Shown here: in pieces, positions 513 to 7,484 of the stretch
Layout: each line of letters opens with the position of its first letter
Position numbering within the stretch: position 1 is the first letter of the stretch
Origin: Salpingoeca rosetta
Lineage: Eukaryota > Protista > Choanoflagellata
Length of the DNA stretch: 64,000 nt
Assembly (NCBI GenBank): GCA_033442325.1
Contig: JAWQFM010000002.1
Location: 2,693,144 to 2,757,143 of the forward strand
Reading direction: 5' to 3'
Notes under the pieces: model-generated
The model's database searches: none
Seen by the model: only the letters and a program-made list of their open reading frames with translations
What the model was told of the DNA's origin: nothing
Made by a program: the position numbers and the translations under genes

Positions 513-1558
513 GCTGGCGTAGCAGTCCTTTGTCGTTTTGAGGGAGAGAGAGAGTGTGCGTGTGTTTGTGCGTGTGTGCGTGTGACGTAGCACGAGCTGG
601 TACTATGTACGAGTGTGGAGATGAAGAAGAGAAGAGCAGCGTGAGTGCTCGCTGAGAAAAGACACGACTGTTGGGCGACAATGACGACGTTCGTGTGGCC
701 CGCTCGAGCTTTGCTTGCTCACTCCGCTTACTCCCTCGCTCGCTTGCTGCAACTTGGATGACATTACCACTCATTCACCCGCGCCCGCACCTGTCTTCCA
801 AGCAAGGCGAAGTTGGCGAGTCGTTGTAGCTCCGGTTCTGGGAAATGATGACACAGGACTGACACGACACCGCAAGGGCTTGAATGATTGAATGGCGTGC
901 CACAAAGTTCCAAACGGTTGCTTGCACCACAACAATCGAAGACTGCGCACAAGTTTGTTGGGTGTACCCCGTGCCACGACACCCCACGATGCAATGGAGA
1001 TGAACAAGGGTTTTCGATATGTGAGCTCGTGGTGATGGATGGATGGGCAGGGAGGAAATGCTTGCTTGCCTGCCTGCCTGCTTGCTTGGGGGATGCCTTT
1101 GTGGTGATCGTTACCACGTTGCTTGCAACCAACTCACCTTCAATCAACCACAAGGCACACAACTTTGGTGGTTGCCACAGCGGCTGCGCTGGATGTGGCA
1201 AGGCTGACAAATATGGCAGTTCGTGACATGATGGCAATCACCTTCGAGGCCCCGAATCACGTCAGCCTACAGCTGCCCACTACGCAACATAGAATAATGG
1301 CGAATATCTTCACGGAAAATCGCAACACTTTAATGGTGGCCGGTGGCGAACGATGACGCGAAGGAAAGGGAAAAGCCTCGCAACACCAAGCAACCAAGCG
1401 ACACACGAAAGCAAAAAGAACACAGCAGTGCAACGAAAGCCAAAGCAGTCAACGCGCAAGGCAAGCAAAGAGGGGGGGGGGGGAGGAAAGCAGAGAACAC
1501 AGCACACAGGCACCACACGGTGTGTGCAGAGTGCTTTTTGGGAGAGGGCGCCCACTCT

Positions 1559-1610
1559 CTAGTAGGAGAAGTAGTGGCCGAAGTAGCCCTCAGGCTGTAC
1601 GGTGGCAAAG

Positions 1611-1642
<32 letters not shown>

Positions 1643-3365
1643 GAACAATTGTGTGAGTAGGGTGGCGATGATGATGTGATGATGGGTAACGATGTATGTG
1701 GCGGGGGTGCAACGGGGTTGGGGAAGCGAAACATGATGTGGGTGAGGGTGGTTGGTTGGTTGGTTGGTTGGGATGTGTTGTGAGGATAAACGGTGGTCGC
1801 AACAGGGATGGGCACAGGAACATACCACAACAGAGGAACAGACAACGGAAGCACAACGAAGCAACATCACAAGACAACGCTGGCACCAAGGGGTACGCAC
1901 CTCCTTGACAAACTTGGTGAGGACGTTCCTGAGGCTGACGACGCGGAGGGGGCGGCCATCGTCATCCACAACGTAGATGCGGTGGATGCGCGAGCGCACA
2001 AGCTGTGAAATGACAGTCTCAAGCTTGTCTGTGGACTTGCACGTGATGGCAGAGTTCTCGGCGCCATCCGTCACCACATCCAGGTACGTCTGCGGTGTGT
2101 GGTGGTGGTGGTGTGTGTGTGTGTGTGCGTGTGATTGCATGGGAGGGCAACGGAGGGGGCGCGTGTGTGCATGTCAGCGTGTATATTGTTTGTGCACGTG
2201 TGTGTGTGTGCGTAAGTGTGAGGCCGTATGCAAACACGCGCACAACAACAACGCAAACAACACAAATTACACACACACCGCAAACAACACAAACACACCT
2301 TGATGGGCATGTCGAGGAGCTTGTAGATCTTGGTGGAGCCGACGATAAGGCGGGCATCGCGCGCGCTCACGTTGCCGTGGATCTTGCCTGCGGAGCCACG
2401 CACGCAGCAGGGGTGGCAGGATGCAAGGGCGCAAGGGTGAGCAGGAAAAGTCACAGTGAGGGAAGCGTTTGAAGAAGGGGGGGGGAGGAATAGCGAGGGC
2501 ATTGTGCATGAACAACGGCAGAAAAGGGCCCAATATGCATGTGCAGATGAACACACACTTAGGCGAAGATGAGTAACAAACAACCAAGCCAAGCCAAACC
2601 ACACAAAACAAAAACACAAACGAAACCAAGCAAAGTCAAAACCAAACACAAGCTCACCTTCGGCGTCGACGACCGGGACAGCGCTGATGTCGTTCTCCTT
2701 GATCTTCTCAAAGGCGGAGCGGAGCGGGTCGTCGAGGGAGACGGTGAACAAGAGGCCCTTGTCCCCAAGGCCAACCTCCTTCAGCGTCTTCGTGCCAACA
2801 TCCTGTCGCACGCGCAGCGACAGGGGGAGAGAGAGTGTGTGTGTGAGTGTGAGAGTGTGTATGTGTGTGTGTGTGAGGGGGGTGTACGTGTGAGTGTGTG
2901 TGTGAGTGTGTGTGCGTGAGTGAGTGTGTGTATGTGTTGGAAAAGTTGCAGAGGTGAGGTGGGAAAGACAGAGGGGAAGCAGGCGGAGTGGGGCGTTGAT
3001 GGCGTAGCGTTGGAAATGTAGAAAACAATGGGGTATTGTTACATGTGACGTGGCGCGACAAACAAGGGCGAATGAAGCAAAACCGAACAGGCGAACACAA
3101 GAGTCACAACATAGAACATCCAACACAATCCCAAAGCGCACTGACCTTGAAGCGGTTGAGGTTTGCCTCGAGCGTCTGGACGAGGGCGCTCTGGGTGATG
3201 ACGTTGACAATGTCACCACCTGGAGTCTTGACGACGGGGACGCGGCGGATGCCATGGTGCCCGCACAGCAGCATGCAGTCAAGCAGGTTGCCTCGCTCAA
3301 GGTCAACAGGCACAAACGGCCCAAAGCGGAAGAACGCTATGTGTGTGCGTGTGTGCGCGCGTGTG

Positions 3366-3412
<47 letters not shown>

Positions 3413-4109
3413 TAGTGGTGAGCACAAGCTCAATGCAGCAAACTCAGAGTTCGGAAGCAAACACACCAAGAGAGCGTCTCAAAGTGACAAATGCAATGAC
3501 AATGCACACACCAATCACACAACGGGCACCACCAGGCAAAGCAACCATGCACGCCTGATACACAAGCATGCAATTGTGTTACGTACAGATTGCGTCCTTG
3601 ACCTGCATCTTCTGGAAGCTCTCCACAGACTCAATCTGCTTGGAAAAGTCCTCCTCCTTGCCGGCGGCAGAGCCGAGAACGCCAAGCATGTGGAACACAA
3701 TGCCAACCATGTCCACCATGCCAATGTACTTGTCGGTCCACGAGGCGTCCTCGGGCTGGGTCACGTCGCGCACGGGCGCAGACAGGATGTGGTTGGACGA
3801 CAGCGTCTTCACCGCATCAAGGATCGTGGCATCAGAGTTGATAATCACAATCTTGCCCAGCGCGGGCGTGGGGAAGACTGCATCACGTTCAAGGCGTAGA
3901 TGTGTGTAAGAGAGAGAGAGTGTGTGTGTGTGTGCACGTGAGTGAGTGAGAGTGAATGAAGAAGTGAGAGAGTGAGGTTGTGTTTGCGACAAAGTCACTC
4001 GGGCTTGTGCACGCATCGCACAACGGCTGCGTGCACGCACAAAAAAACGACAAGCAGCAGTTGGTGCAACAACCACATTGCACTGTCGAACGAACACACA
4101 CACACACAC

Positions 4110-4154
<45 letters not shown>

Positions 4155-4290
4155 CACACACNNNNNNNNNNNNNNNNNNNNNNNNNNNNNNNNNNNNNNN
4201 NNNNNNNNNNNNNNNNNNNNNNNNNNNNNNNNNNNNNNNNNNNNNNNNNNNNNNNNNNNNNCACTAGTCGACGAACACACACACACACAC

Positions 4291-4335
<45 letters not shown>

Positions 4336-4825
4336 CACACACACACGCACGCACGCACACACACTTACTTGTCATGGGAACGGCCTCAAACTCTGGGTTG
4401 AGCTTGCCATCGCCCTCCTCCTCGGCGCGGGCGTCGGCCATCTTGATCTGTTTCTCCTGGAACTCCTTGTCCTTGGCCACGGTGACGGTGAGGACGCCGT
4501 GCTCGCAGGTGGCCTTGACGTTCTCCACGTCTGTGCCGGCCGGCAGGCGGAAGGTGCGGCAGAAGGTGCCGAAGGAGCGCTCCATCCTGTGGAAGTGCTG
4601 GCCGGTGCCCGTGGTGCGCTGCTTACGCTCGCCAGAGAGCTGCAGCAGGTCTGTCGTCACGCGCACGTGCACGTCCTTGGAGGAGAGGCCGGGGCAGTCT
4701 GTGATGAAGACATACGAGTCGTCCGTCTCGTAAATGTCGACAGGGCCCATAAAGGGGGACGTGGCGTGGTGAACGGCCTTGCTTGGCTTTGAGCCAAGCG
4801 TCACGGGGTCATACTTGAAAGGCAT
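1559..4825 (-). CDS. HSP20/alpha-crystallin domain fused to a 4xCBS (SnRK1/AMPK gamma, KING1-like) module, ~465 aa
   Basis: Exons 4825-4369, 3877-3587, 3336-3146, 2802-2658, 2387-2299, 2089-1901, 1594-1559. All introns GT-AG and phase-compatible, total 1398 nt. ACD motifs VDIYET...PGL...SGERK...MERSFGTFCRTFRLP...GVLTVTVAK. CBS motifs HILSAPVRD, GIRRVPVV, ISAVPVVD, IHRIYVVD. C-terminus PEGYFGHYF. Confidence 0.85.
4162..4261. other. Assembly gap (100 N) inside an intron
   Basis: N run. The flanks carry near-identical sequence (cactgtcgaacgaacac.. at 4081 and cactagtcgacgaacac.. at 4262), suggesting overlapping contig ends. Confidence 0.95.
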
Positions 4826-5815
4826 CCTGCTGGAAGTGGATTTGAAGATGTGGCGGGGGGGGGAAGGGTTTCGCTTGCAAAGAAAACGGTAGGCTGTGTG
4901 TGTGTGTGCGTGTGTTCTTTCAAGGTGAACATGCACAAAGAGAGAGAGAGAGAGTGTGTGTGTGTGTGTGTGTGTGTGGTGAGGGGAGGAAGGAGGTAGG
5001 ATTCGCACCGCAACGAGAAAGAGCGCACAGTGTGCATCCAATGTGAGTGGGTTGGAGACGTGGTAAAGCAATAGGGAAGCAAGTAAACGAGGTAAAACAC
5101 AAACAAACAAACAAACAAACCAACCACACACACACAAGCCACGCACACATGCACACACAACTCACCGAAACGAGAGATGAATGAATGGCGTCGTTGACCA
5201 GGTGGAGAATAAAGTGGCCAATGCAAACAAGCCAAGCGAGTCAAGTGGTTGGAAGGTGCAAGTGAGGAGACGCGAGTGTATTGTGTGTGTGTGTCGGGGG
5301 TTGATGAATGCCTTGCTGAGTATGTAACGTGTACACCATGCAATCACTCTTCCCATCTCATGCACTCATCACGCTGGCTGGCTGTTGTGGGTTGTTTCTC
5401 TCTCATCAGGGAGCAAGGCAAGGCAAGGCAAGAAGGCACGGCAAGACGAGTAAGCAAAGCAAGCAAAGCAAGCAAGGAGGCAACGATCAGGCAAAACCCA
5501 CCTCTTGCTTGTTTGCTTGTTTGCTTGGAGTGGTCGACAGTGGAAATGCAATCAAGCAATCACTCAAAAGCCCTGACGCAACGCAATCGCCATCGTCGCC
5601 ACAGCAAGACAGGACAGGACAAAAACATTCCAAACACGACACCACAAAATGGGTCGCACACTTCTCCACCATCCATGATGATGATGATGGTGGTTGTGCA
5701 CATGAGGTGCGTGCTATCAGAACGACAGGCGCGTTCACGTCACGTCATCACTTGTCACATCAACGACTTTAATTATCGTACAGTTTCAGTTAGAAAAAGA
5801 CAAACATCCCTCACC

Positions 5816-5863
<48 letters not shown>

Positions 5864-5935
5864 CACGTTGTAGCCTTGTGCCTGTCCTGTGAAGCCAGTC
5901 GCGGTGCAATCCCCACAACCACACTGCTGTTCCTG

Positions 5936-7484
5936 TCACGTGTGCTTGTTGGGTACACGCATCTTGCGTTGCTTGTGGGCAACACGCACAAGAGATTCCT
6001 GGTCACCGCCACGCATCACGTCACCACTCCACTGTTTCGGCGCGTTTTCCGAATCCTCCTCATCGTCATCGTCGCTGCTCCAGTCCCCCTTTGGCTCGCG
6101 CTTGAGCTTCAGCCTGTCCCTGCCCGCACCCACACGCGAAGAAGCATCGCCTGGCATCTGCACTGACTGCTGCTGCTGCAGCTGGTGCTGCATTGATGCT
6201 AGAGTAGTGGTGGTGTTGTTGTGGTGGGCAGGGGACCGTGTGTTTTGCTTACGGTCATTGCTTGCTGTTTGGCTCAGCGTTGCCTTTCCCACGGGCGATG
6301 CAGCTGTTGGCGTGTTTGATGTGGTGGGGGCGCCGTGCTTCCTGGGCACGGAGTCTTGGAGAACACGAGGGTGTGCGTGGCGTGTGCTGTTGCCGTCCTG
6401 GGCCGCCTGCCGCCTCCTCCGCAGAAAGTTGGCAAACGTGCCCTTCCTCTGTGCTGTGAGGTCTGGTTGGATTGCACGCGCCGGTGGGTGTGCTGGCAGC
6501 AGTGCGCTGTCGCCACACGTATCCATCGTCAGCGTGCCGAGCAGGCCCATCCCGGGATCCAGCTTTGACGCCTCCGTAAGCTTACTTGATAGCGCGCTCA
6601 AGTCCATGTCATCTCTACCGAGTTTTTTTGTGCGAGTATGTGAGTGAGTGAGTGAGTGTGTGCGTGTGTGTGTGCGTGTGTGTGTGTGCGTGTGCGTGTG
6701 TGAGCATGTGTGTGCGTGTGAGTGAGCGTGGGTGTACGTGTGTGTACGTGTGTGTGCAAGTATGTGCGTGAGTATGTAAGCGGTTCAATGAGGCACTTGT
6801 TTTGTCAGCGAGTACACTGAAACAGAATCATGTGTGTGAGTGGGTCGAGGCAACAAGCGCTGAAGACACCAACCCCACACTGCATCAAGTACAAGTCTTA
6901 ACAAGCAACGAGAAACGCATAAGATCCGCACTCGTGGGCCGCGTTCTCCGTTGTTGCCGCTTCAACCAAGTGTGCATACAATGTCTTGGCCGACACCACA
7001 CCTGTAGGTGTGTGCGCGCGCGTGTGCGCGTGTGCGCGATGCGTGAGTGAGGCATCACAAGACAGACAGCGTCACAAGACAGACAGCGCCGTGGTATACT
7101 GATTTGCACGCAGAGCGTGCGGCCACCAGTGCCAGCATAAAATATAACGCGAACCTGTGTCGTGTGTGTGCTTGCGCGTCCATTCCAGCAGTTGCTTGAG
7201 CGCATCTCGAAACCCGCACACATACGCCAACCGAATCTCCTTTGCACGCACTGCAATCGAACGCCCATGCGCGTGTGTCAGGCGTGGTGTAAAGAGAGGG
7301 CAGAGAAGCATGCATGGTGACAGGCAGAGTGTGAGAGCGAGACTGTGTGTGTGAGTGTGTGTGTGTGTGAGTGTGAGTGTGTGAGAGAGAGAGTGTGTGT
7401 GTGTGAGTGTGTGAGTGTGTGAGAGAGACAGGCACATACACACACAGACGCACACACAGGCACAGACGCACACACACACACACA

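What the first reader, a model, noticed from the sequence alone, without database searches (positions are those of the whole stretch)
1559..4825. Small heat-shock protein fused to an AMPK-gamma/KING1-type CBS module: candidate adenylate-sensing chaperone
Seen: one exon (4825-4369) encodes a complete alpha-crystallin domain, has no stop, and runs into KLNPEFEAVPMT. It splices in phase 1 to IFPTPALGKIVIINSDATILDAVKTLSSNHILSAPVRDVTQPEDASWTDKYIGMV. From memory this aligns with plant SnRK1 gamma-1 (KING1: KLNACFESIPVSAFP...SDTSLAEAVQTL...LSAPVVDVDAPEDASWIDRYIGIV), and the C-terminal PEGYFG motif also matches. Because the gamma-subunit homology begins inside the HSP20 exon, the fusion is not an artefact of exon joining or of the N gap. 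Known: sHSPs are ATP-independent holdases and CBS pairs bind AMP/ADP/ATP. Inference: a holdase whose oligomeric state is gated by energy charge, or a gamma-like subunit that links AMPK/SnRK1 signalling to proteostasis. I know of no characterised protein with this architecture. The ACD looks bacterial/plant-type (ERSFG.F.R.F.LP) rather than animal-type.
Basis: partly seen in the sequence, partly recalled or inferred. Interest (0 to 1): 0.85.

Follow-up and report, generated by a model that had tools for sequence, protein, structure and literature searches.

The report
Small heat-shock protein fused to CBS sensor
A choanoflagellate (Salpingoeca rosetta) gene really does encode one expressed protein that joins a complete small heat-shock chaperone to a four-CBS module of the kind that senses AMP/ADP/ATP; the fusion is conserved in other choanoflagellates, no paper on it was found, and it could link protein protection to the cell's energy state.

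Summary
Observation confirmed. On the minus strand, seven GT-AG exons (4825-1559) give a 465-aa protein. It is identical to the Salpingoeca rosetta database entry 'hsp16-like protein, variant' (XP_004997523).

- **Domains:** residues 29-118 are an HSP20 alpha-crystallin domain. Residues ~137-465 are a four-CBS module.
- **Assembly gap:** the gap (4162-4261) lies inside intron 1 and does not affect the coding sequence.
- **Transcript evidence:** spliced contigs from two studies and raw RNA reads from a third join 4369 to 3877 exactly. Intron 1 has zero depth.
- **Conservation:** the same fusion (449-472 aa) occurs in Hartaetosiga balthica, Salpingoeca infusionum, Choanoeca perplexa, C. flexa, S. 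helianthica and environmental transcripts. They form one well-supported clade.
- **Rarity:** among the 150 best-scoring of 1.84 billion protein representatives, only this cluster had the architecture.
- **CBS part:** it is KING1-like (33-35% identity to plant SnRK1 gamma-1) and has the AMPK-gamma fold. Nucleotide-binding residues are kept at sites 3 and 4 only. The residues that couple gamma to the AMPK alpha subunit are absent.
- **Structure prediction:** AlphaFold gives one compact body (pTM 0.84-0.85) for two divergent orthologues.

The function is inferred, not shown. A ligand-regulated small heat-shock protein is my favoured reading (about 0.4). No paper on this protein or architecture was found.

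The parts
4369..4825 (-). Exon 1, coding part: Met1 to first base of codon 153. It holds the short N-terminal region, the alpha-crystallin domain, the C-terminal anchoring-type motif and the start of the CBS-module homology.
   Evidence: covered by spliced RNA contigs.
4472..4741 (-). Alpha-crystallin domain (HSP20), residues 29-118. It has the F.R.F.LP and GVLTVTV signatures and a long beta6 loop (residues 68-85).
   Evidence: Pfam PF00011 E 1.8e-21. PDB sequence hits: pea HSP18.1 2.3e-18, wheat HSP16.9. AF2 strands 29-118 at pLDDT 83-97.
4439..4447 (-). Hydrophobic-x-hydrophobic motif I127-K-M129, at the position of the sHSP C-terminal I/V-x-I/V anchoring motif.
   Evidence: Aligned column reads IPI, IDI, VTI, IAV, VPI, VNV, IMV, VEI in the more distant fusion orthologues and IKM/LTL/LSM/LAL in the S. 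rosetta subclade. AF2 puts it in a helix in S. rosetta and in a short strand in P0013.
4370..4417 (-). Residues 137-152 (EGDGKLNPEFEAVPMT): conserved pre-CBS1 segment of the KING1-like module, encoded inside exon 1.
   Evidence: Conserved in fused and unfused relatives and in plant KING1. Alignments to unfused proteins start at residues 132-148. pLDDT 98.
3878..4368 (-). Intron 1 (phase 1, GT..AG). It contains the assembly gap 4162-4261 flanked by (GT)n, so its true length is unknown.
   Evidence: RNA depth 0 and spliced out in contigs and reads.
3587..3877 (-). Exon 2: CBS1 (about residues 157-215) and the CBS1-CBS2 linker. At site 1 the ribose Asp position is Gly211; the gamma-1 R70 position is Leu184.
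3146..3336 (-). Exon 3: CBS2 (about residues 255-307). R280 and R281 sit at the gamma-1 H151/R152 positions. At site 2 the Asp position is Ala300. S299, A300, Q303, T304, N308 replace the alpha-RIM contact residues.
2658..2802 (-). Exon 4: first half of CBS3 (includes S353).
   Evidence: Pfam CBS 1.2e-05; splice joint 2801/3145 seen in 272 and 210 reads.
2299..2387 (-). Exon 5: second half of CBS3 with the G-N-V-S369-A-R-D372 motif (ribose-binding Asp of site 3, invariant).
   Evidence: splice joint 2386/2657 seen in 330 and 192 reads.
1901..2089 (-). Exon 6: CBS4 with H427, R428 (gamma-1 H298/R299), S443, and N446 (Asp/Asn of site 4).
   Evidence: Pfam CBS 3.7e-09.
1595..1900 (-). Intron 6: 306 nt, in frame and without a stop; retained at a low level.
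   Evidence: ORF 1559-2140 reads through it. Depth 15-22 against about 450 in the flanking exons in X21; retention contigs X13 record 2 and X4 record 3.
1559..1594 (-). Exon 7: PEGYFGHYFSY plus the TAG stop. This is the C-terminal motif shared with plant KING1.
4826..4916 (-). 5' untranslated part of exon 1. A 5'-UTR intron (4917-5163) probably precedes it.
   Evidence: RNA contigs reach 4884-4886 and X13 record 1 has 110 further letters. Depth is 0 at 4909-5000. The 559-aa database isoform P0227 uses an upstream exon ending at about 5164.

Best explanation
**Shown.** This is one expressed Salpingoeca rosetta gene. Its 465-aa product has four parts in order:
- a short disordered N-terminus;
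- a complete small-heat-shock-protein unit, made of the alpha-crystallin domain with its beta6 dimerisation loop and then a hydrophobic-x-hydrophobic motif at the place of the I-x-I oligomerisation anchor;
- an acidic EGDG linker;
- a four-CBS disc with the AMPK-gamma fold, belonging to the KING1-like branch.

The fusion predates the divergence of the choanoflagellate lineages sampled here (the placement of these species in several craspedid groups is from memory) and both halves are conserved.

**Inferred.**
- The second CBS pair (CBS3 and CBS4) binds an adenine nucleotide or a related ligand. The residues involved would be S369/D372 and S443/N446, with H427, R428, R280 and R281 holding the phosphates.
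- Because the chaperone domain and the CBS disc are predicted to form one rigid body, ligand occupancy would change how the alpha-crystallin domain and its anchoring motif are presented.
- That would change the protein's assembly state and its ability to hold unfolding proteins. The result would be an sHSP switched by energy charge rather than by heat alone.
For: - **Gene model and identity to XP_004997523:**
- **Spliced RNA across every intron, including the one with the gap, in three studies:**
- **Both domains pass Pfam thresholds:**
- **Fusion conserved:** five named choanoflagellate species besides S. rosetta plus at least eight environmental sequences, in one clade with support 99.
- **Both halves under constraint:** ACD identity 48-74% and CBS identity 60-76% to S. 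rosetta.
- **Anchoring-type motif:** canonical (IPI, IDI, VTI and similar) in most orthologues.
- **CBS module:** aligns over all four CBS repeats with AMPK gamma-1 and S. pombe gamma (E 1.5e-15). The model superposes on gamma-1 at TM 0.86.
- **Nucleotide-site residues:** D372, S369, S353, H427, R428 and R281 are invariant in 19 clade members; R280 is R in 18; position 446 is N or D.
- **Compact predicted structure:** mean pLDDT 90 and pTM 0.85 and 0.84 for two orthologues only 58% identical, with linker pLDDT 90-98.
Against: - There are no biochemical data of any kind.
- Sites 1 and 2 lack the ribose-binding Asp (G211, A300), so at most two ligand sites remain.
- I found no report of the ligand of KING1-type proteins in the papers searched.
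- The N-terminal region is only 20-28 residues and poorly conserved (17-58%). From memory, sHSPs with very short N-termini such as C. elegans Hsp12.2/12.3 are poor holdases.
- In S. rosetta itself the anchoring motif is degenerate (I-K-M) and predicted helical.
- No three-unit heat-shock element lies within about 1.4 kb upstream.
- The gene is well covered by reads in the two raw RNA runs sampled (conditions not known to me), so nothing seen here marks it as a stress-only gene.
- The rigid-body claim rests on pTM alone. I could not inspect coordinates or the predicted aligned error.
Confidence: 0.4

Rival explanations
1. Scaffold reading. The alpha-crystallin domain is not a chaperone here. 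It is a structural or oligomerising beta-sandwich bolted onto a KING1-like regulator, much as plant KIN-beta-gamma carries a carbohydrate-binding beta-sandwich in front of its four CBS repeats. The working part would be the CBS disc, which binds an unknown partner, and the ACD would only dimerise or localise it.
For: - AF2 predicts one compact body with a well-ordered linker.
- The ESM-Atlas shape search returns the plant CBM+CBS (KIN-beta-gamma) cluster aligned over query residues 18-453, TM 0.59.
- The N-terminal region is short and variable.
- Salpingoeca urceolata, nested inside the fusion clade, has a transcript without the ACD, so the CBS part may be able to stand alone.
Against: - The sHSP signature residues and, in most orthologues, a canonical I/V-x-I/V anchoring motif are retained. 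A pure spacer would not need them.
- TM 0.59 is weak, and most of it comes from the CBS part.
Confidence: 0.3
2. AMPK-subunit reading. The protein is a gamma subunit, or gamma-like accessory, of the S. rosetta AMPK complex, and brings a chaperone domain to the kinase.
For: Full four-CBS module with the gamma fold. H151/R152 and H298/R299 equivalents are conserved.
Against: - About 200 bits to plant KING1 against about 60 bits to AMPK gamma-1 and S. pombe gamma.
- The alpha-RIM contact network K170, R171, K174, F175, F179 is S, A, Q, T, N (roles from PMC6274893).
- The R70 position is Leu and site 1 is lost.
- Plant SnRK1 gamma (KING1) is reported not to join beta subunits or complement snf4 (PMC4033248).
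- I could not check whether S. rosetta has a separate canonical gamma. That it does is an expectation from general knowledge.
Confidence: 0.1
3. Artefact reading. Two neighbouring genes, an sHSP and a CBS protein, are wrongly joined because of the assembly gap or an over-long gene model.
For: The gap and the (GT)n tracts lie between the two parts.
Against: - Spliced contigs and raw reads join 4369 to 3877 in three studies; intron 1 has zero depth; no separate start is seen at exon 2.
- Complete 461-472-aa ORFs with both domains exist in independent transcriptomes of five other species.
- The CBS-family homology starts inside exon 1.
Confidence: 0.02

Closest known systems
Plant SnRK1 gamma-1 (KING1 / SnRK1-gamma) and the wider family of gamma-like four-CBS proteins, including unfused choanoflagellate paralogues such as Monosiga brevicollis MONBRDRAFT_37974
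   Same: - 33-35% identity over the whole CBS module, E about 1e-50.
- Shared pre-CBS1 LN..F..IP..FP segment, PEDASW insertion in CBS1 and C-terminal EP.GYFG motif.
- Same pattern of lost site 1 and site 2 Asp and kept site 3 and site 4.
   Different: - None of these carries an alpha-crystallin domain.
- Plant KING1 has K and S at the H151/R152 positions, where the fusion clade has R R.
- The fusion clade is separate from the plant clade and from the unfused choanoflagellate paralogues.
AMPK gamma-1 / Snf4 / S. pombe gamma (adenylate sensor of AMPK)
   Same: - Four tandem CBS repeats forming one disc; Foldseek TM 0.86, rmsd 3.2 A over about 300 residues.
- Sequence E 1.5e-15.
- Site 3 Asp and the H298/R299 and R152 equivalents are kept.
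   Different: - Only about 20% identity.
- R70, D90, K170, R171, K174, F175 and F179 are not conserved.
- No evidence of alpha or beta partners.
- It has an N-terminal sHSP in place of a variable tail.
Plant class I cytosolic and bacterial small heat-shock proteins (pea HSP18.1, wheat HSP16.9, Xanthomonas HspA)
   Same: - Alpha-crystallin domain, E 2e-18 to 5e-16.
- Long beta6 loop, typical of sHSPs that dimerise by strand exchange.
- Conserved Arg in F.R.F.LP, the GVLTVTV.K strand, and an I/V-x-I/V-type motif after beta9.
   Different: - The N-terminal region is much shorter.
- The C-terminal extension does not end after the anchoring motif but runs into a 35-kDa CBS disc.
- The motif is degenerate in S. 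rosetta.
Plant KIN-beta-gamma (CBM48 fused to a four-CBS gamma)
   Same: Same layout, an N-terminal beta-sandwich followed by a gamma-type four-CBS module. It was the only other multi-domain cluster returned by the Atlas shape search.
   Different: The beta-sandwich is a carbohydrate-binding module, not an alpha-crystallin domain. According to the literature, KIN-beta-gamma is the canonical SnRK1 gamma (PMC4033248).

Membership tests
Small heat-shock proteins (HSP20, PF00011) | Alpha-crystallin domain above the Pfam gathering score | tested here: met
   76.6 bits against a cut-off of 20.8, residues 30-127; 73.6 bits in the whole protein.
Small heat-shock proteins (HSP20, PF00011) | C-terminal I/V-x-I/V anchoring motif after beta9 | tested here: inconclusive
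   Canonical in most fusion orthologues (IPI, IDI, VTI, IAV, VEI). In S. rosetta it is I-K-M and predicted helical.
Small heat-shock proteins (HSP20, PF00011) | Dimer and large-oligomer formation, and ATP-independent holdase activity | not testable with these tools
   Needs purified protein. No multimer prediction was available.
AMPK gamma / Snf4 subunits | Four tandem CBS repeats with the gamma-subunit disc fold | tested here: met
   Alignment over gamma-1 residues 43-323; Foldseek TM 0.86 to 6b1u, 4cfh and 2ya3.
AMPK gamma / Snf4 subunits | Ribose-binding Asp at CBS1, CBS3 and CBS4 (three working nucleotide sites; PMC6274893) | tested here: not met
   CBS1 position is G211 (G/A/S/K in the clade). 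CBS3 is D372, invariant. CBS4 is N446 (N in 15, D in 4).
AMPK gamma / Snf4 subunits | Residues that couple nucleotide binding to the alpha subunit (K170, R171, K174, F175, F179; PMC6274893) | tested here: not met
   They are S299, A300, Q303, T304 and N308, invariant in 19 clade members.
AMPK gamma / Snf4 subunits | Assembly with alpha and beta subunits | not testable with these tools
   Needs co-purification.
KING1-like (SnRK1-gamma-like) four-CBS proteins | Full-length similarity, with the pre-CBS1 LN..F..IP..FP segment, the PEDASW-type insertion in CBS1 and the C-terminal EP.GYFG motif | tested here: met
   E 1e-47 to 1e-55 to named plant SnRK1 gamma-1 proteins; motifs aligned. The tree places it among KING1-like rows as a clade of its own.

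The most novel reading that the evidence does not exclude
A natural small heat-shock protein carries its own adenylate sensor, so that falling energy charge directly switches on an ATP-independent holdase at the moment the ATP-dependent chaperones stall. By the Rosetta-stone logic of gene fusions, the enigmatic unfused KING1-type proteins of plants and protists would then also work with small heat-shock proteins rather than with SnRK1/AMPK.
Probability: 0.3. Interest if true: 0.8.

Novelty: new variant of a known kind. Interest (0 to 1): 0.6.

Why it matters
- **A new kind of switch for sHSPs.** Small heat-shock proteins are textbook ATP-independent chaperones. Their known switches are heat, pH, redox and phosphorylation. 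A built-in nucleotide-sensing module would be a new kind of switch and would tie the first line of defence against aggregation to energy stress.
- **A functional clue for KING1-type proteins.** The role of these gamma-like proteins in plants has stayed unclear since they were shown not to act as the canonical SnRK1 gamma. The fusion suggests they may partner with sHSPs.
- **It is directly testable.** From general knowledge, Salpingoeca rosetta can be transfected and gene-edited, and the protein is small and predicted to be well folded.

The caveat is that everything beyond architecture, expression and conservation is inference.

Tried and rejected
- **Mis-joining across the gap:** rejected by the RNA contigs and reads.
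- **Heat-shock elements:** a scan for three-unit elements (at most one mismatch) from 4826 to 6300 found none; the whole window has 5 per pattern.
- **Other proteins with both domains:**
  - The exhaustive representative search listed only one fusion representative (P0011).
  - The one other candidate with two matched stretches in the ACD (P0170) is a double-ACD protein.
  - Long CBS proteins in the list carry PAP2, GAF or nothing else.
  - Fusions of an ACD with a single CBS pair would score below the 150 rows shown, so they are not excluded.
- **ESM Atlas:** the search by features gave no usable hit. The shape search gave only plant CBS clusters.
- **ACD-alone search:** it found just 9 candidates and no close free-standing paralogue, so the origin of the ACD stays open.
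- **Literature:** five topical searches and one search for the protein accessions found nothing on this protein or architecture. The one sHSP paper that mentions S. rosetta uses a different protein, XP_004994845.
- **Ramon et al. 2013** is not held, so I rely on the summary in PMC4033248.
- **Earlier notes of the scan:** nothing relevant.
- **Canonical AMPK gammas:** group B of the tree proved not to be canonical gammas. No canonical gamma sequence was available for the tree.
- **Neighbouring ORFs:** no Pfam domain above its gathering score, only a weak sub-threshold SR-25 match for one ORF.
- **Model coordinates:** not available, so the ACD-CBS interface could not be examined.
Full report
**What is in the sequence.** Read on the minus strand, the region holds seven exons: 4825-4369, 3877-3587, 3336-3146, 2802-2658, 2387-2299, 2089-1901 and 1594-1559. 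All have GT..AG borders. They sum to 1398 nt and give a 465-aa protein.
- Pfam finds an HSP20 alpha-crystallin domain in exon 1 (E 1.8e-21) and CBS domains in exons 2, 3, 4 and 6. The same two families are found in the whole protein.
- The window is 56% G+C, and most of the gene's introns hold (CA)n/(GT)n tracts.
- The assembly gap 4162-4261 sits between two (GT)n runs inside intron 1 (4368-3878). Its unknown length therefore cannot affect the reading frame.

**Is it one gene?** Yes.
- A search restricted to exon 1, but allowing longer candidates, returned a 465-aa protein 100% identical to my model. It is 'hsp16-like protein, variant' of Salpingoeca rosetta (XP_004997523.1 / EGD80962.1) and carries both Pfam families.
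- Reads and contigs of four runs were laid on 1400-5000. One 1787-nt contig of a 2011 run covers all seven exons with every intron removed. A 999-nt contig of a 2024 run covers exons 3, 2 and 1.
- In both contigs, the block ending at 3877 is followed after 5 letters by the block starting at 4374. Those 5 letters are 4369-4373, so the joint is exactly 3877|4369.
- In the 2026 raw RNA-seq run X22, 49 reads that stop at 3877 continue with 17 letters identical to the end of exon 1.
- Depth in intron 1 is zero. Exon 1 depth (81-296) is comparable with that of the later exons. No pile-up of read starts is listed at exon 2.
- The first mate lies almost only on the plus strand, as expected for a minus-strand RNA in a standard stranded library.
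- The second database isoform (559 aa, P0227) differs only by 94 low-complexity residues translated from an upstream 5'-UTR exon. Orthologues start at the same MPF(F)KYDPV as the 465-aa form, so I take the 465-aa form as the product.

**Where the two halves meet.**
- Local alignments of the full protein to unfused four-CBS relatives begin at query residues 132-148. Exon 1 ends at residue 152.
- The segment EGDG-(K/S)LN-x-EF-xx-VP-xx-FPTP is among the best conserved parts of the fusion proteins. Its core LN..F..(I/V)P..FP is present in plant SnRK1 gamma-1 proteins and in unfused choanoflagellate paralogues.
- The junction therefore lies at about residues 130-137, inside exon 1, and not at today's intron.

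**Distribution.**
- Full-length fusions of 449-472 aa with both Pfam families occur in transcriptomes of Hartaetosiga balthica (74% identity), Salpingoeca infusionum (66%), Choanoeca perplexa (64%), Choanoeca flexa and Salpingoeca helianthica (59%). At least eight more come from environmental or run-derived contigs.
- In a maximum-likelihood tree of the CBS module, all fusions fall in one clade of 19 rows (SH-aLRT 99). This clade is separate from the plant KING1 clade (100) and from the clade of unfused choanoflagellate paralogues that holds Monosiga brevicollis MONBRDRAFT_37974.
- Three ACD-less rows in the fusion clade (P0016-P0018) are N-terminally truncated fragments.
- P0019 (335 aa) starts just before the pre-CBS1 segment and may be a genuinely unfused form.
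- Salpingoeca urceolata has a 'complete' ORF whose N-terminus is unrelated to an ACD. This is either a secondary loss or an assembly problem.
- HMMER read all 1.84 billion representatives. Only one fusion representative appears among the best 150. The one other row with two ACD stretches is a double-ACD protein.
- An ACD joined to a four-CBS module elsewhere should have scored above the last row shown (101 bits). An ACD joined to a single CBS pair might not, so that architecture is not excluded.

**The sHSP half.**
- The best solved relatives are pea HSP18.1 (2.3e-18), a bacterial HspA, wheat HSP16.9 and yeast Hsp26. No animal HSPB chain reached E 0.01.
- The signature F.R.F.LP and GVLTVTV.K strands and an 18-residue beta6 loop are present.
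- About ten residues after beta9, most orthologues have a textbook I/V-x-I/V motif (IPI, IDI, VTI, IAV, VPI, VNV, IMV, VEI). The S. rosetta subclade has I-K-M, L-T-L, L-S-M or L-A-L.
- The N-terminal region is short (20-28 residues), poorly conserved (17-58% identity) and predicted disordered.
- The ACD is 48-74% identical across the fusions, against 60-76% for the CBS part. Both halves are under constraint.

**The CBS half.**
- It aligns over all four repeats with human AMPK gamma-1 (residues 43-323) and S. pombe gamma (E 1.5e-15). The AlphaFold model superposes on gamma-1 at TM 0.86.
- It is far closer to plant SnRK1 gamma-1 / KING1: about 200 bits and 33-35% identity over the whole module.
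- I mapped the gamma-1 residues through the HMMER alignment and counted them in 19 clade members, as tabulated below.

| Gamma-1 feature | Gamma-1 residue(s) | Fusion clade |
|---|---|---|
| CBS3 ribose Asp | D245 | D372, invariant, in a G-N-V/I-S-A-R-D motif |
| CBS4 ribose position | D317 | 446: N in 15, D in 4 |
| Phosphate-binding residues | H298, R299, R152, H151 | H427, R428, R281 invariant; R280 in 18 |
| CBS1 ribose Asp | D90 | G211 |
| CBS2 Asp position | R171 (Arg in gamma-1) | A300 |
| Site 3 phosphate contact | R70 | L184 |
| Alpha-subunit coupling network | K170, R171, K174, F175, F179 | S, A, Q, T, N |

- The alpha-coupling roles and the three working gamma-1 sites are taken from PMC6274893.
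- My reading is that a ligand site, probably for an adenine nucleotide, survives in the second Bateman pair, and that the surface which talks to the AMPK alpha subunit does not.
- The review PMC4033248, citing Ramon et al. 2013, reports that plant SnRK1 gamma does not join beta subunits or complement snf4. The nearest named family is therefore itself not a canonical AMPK subunit.

**Predicted structure.**
- With an 80-row alignment, the S. rosetta protein folds at mean pLDDT 90.4 and pTM 0.85. Residues 1-22 are disordered and residues 120-134 form a helix. The linker and pre-CBS1 segment have pLDDT 97-98.
- An environmental orthologue only 58% identical, with an I-P-I motif, gives pLDDT 90.2 and pTM 0.84. 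Its motif sits in a short strand.
- A pTM this high for a two-domain chain suggests a fixed arrangement of ACD and CBS disc. This is an inference, because I could not see coordinates or the predicted aligned error.
- The Atlas shape search returned plant KING1-like clusters. It also returned the plant CBM+CBS (KIN-beta-gamma) cluster aligned over residues 18-453, TM 0.59. That is a weak hint that the layout 'beta-sandwich in front of a gamma disc' has a plant parallel.

**How it most likely works.**
- Shown: a single conserved, expressed polypeptide with an sHSP unit and a KING1-like four-CBS disc.
- Inferred step 1 (about 0.7): the ACD dimerises, and in most species oligomerises through the I-x-I motif.
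- Inferred step 2 (about 0.65): the CBS3/CBS4 pair binds a nucleotide-type ligand.
- Inferred step 3 (about 0.35-0.4): ligand occupancy changes assembly or client binding.
- Points against this reading are the short N-terminus, the degenerate motif in S. rosetta and the absence of a heat-shock element. The RNA runs sampled also give no sign of stress-only expression.
- The main rival (about 0.3) is that the ACD is only a structural or oligomerising appendage of a regulator whose business end is the CBS disc. A true AMPK gamma role is unlikely (about 0.1), and an annotation artefact is excluded.

**Novelty.**
- The gene is in the databases under a name that mentions only the sHSP. One automatic JGI label lists both domains.
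- Five topical full-text searches and a search for the accessions found no paper on it.
- Both domain families are well known, while their combination appears undescribed and confined to choanoflagellates. I therefore class it as a new variant of a known kind.
- It is of moderate to high interest because it yields two sharp, testable hypotheses. One is a nucleotide-gated sHSP. The other is a proteostasis role for KING1-type proteins.

Noticed in passing
window 1595-1900 (minus strand): The last intron is 306 nt, in frame and free of stops. Retention would insert 102 low-complexity residues just before the PEGYFG tail. Low-level retention is visible: depth 15-22 against about 450 in one run, plus two retention contigs. 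The S. infusionum ORF (P0003) ends ...KFVKEVCLSTKHSYAV, which looks like read-through at the same intron position.
   Followed up: partly
window 4917-5365 (minus strand): The gene seems to have a 5'-UTR intron (about 4917-5163). The 559-aa RefSeq isoform XP_004997524 starts at an upstream ATG near 5356 and adds 94 low-complexity residues that no orthologue has. This is probably an annotation artefact. My read stretch ended at 5000, so the upstream exon was not covered.
   Followed up: partly
window 1471-1472: In the 3' UTR homopolymer, 67 of 156 and 21 of 78 RNA reads and one contig carry one extra base relative to the assembly. This is a length error or polymorphism in the poly-G/C run.
   Followed up: no
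window 4080-4365 and other introns of the gene: The assembly gap is bracketed by long (GT)n tracts, and most of the gene's introns carry (CA)n/(GT)n microsatellites. The gap is most likely a collapsed microsatellite.
   Followed up: no
P0020 (Salpingoeca urceolata) and P0019 (environmental): Two members of the fusion clade lack the alpha-crystallin domain. P0020 has an unrelated N-terminus, then a possible internal start at MTEVKYEDLQGDGSLN. P0019 starts just before the pre-CBS1 segment. This is either secondary loss of the ACD or an incomplete transcript.
   Followed up: partly
P0094 and P0232 (run-derived genomic contigs of close relatives): Prokaryote-style gene calls of 164 and 188 aa are 76% and 89% identical to exon 1. 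P0094 runs into non-homologous sequence right after ...VPMS, at the same exon 1 boundary, so the intron position seems conserved in that relative. The sequence of P0232 was not inspected.
   Followed up: no
PDB hits 9e6q, 9e7f, 9znf, 9zng, 9zni: Archaeal four-CBS ribosome-hibernation factors (Dri, Sri) appear among the structural neighbours of the CBS module. A 2026 preprint (10.64898/2026.01.19.700304) describes an archaeal ribosome-hibernation complex said to sense energy status; it mentions CBS domains, but I did not read how. It may be another case of an energy-status sensor attached to a non-kinase effector.
   Followed up: no
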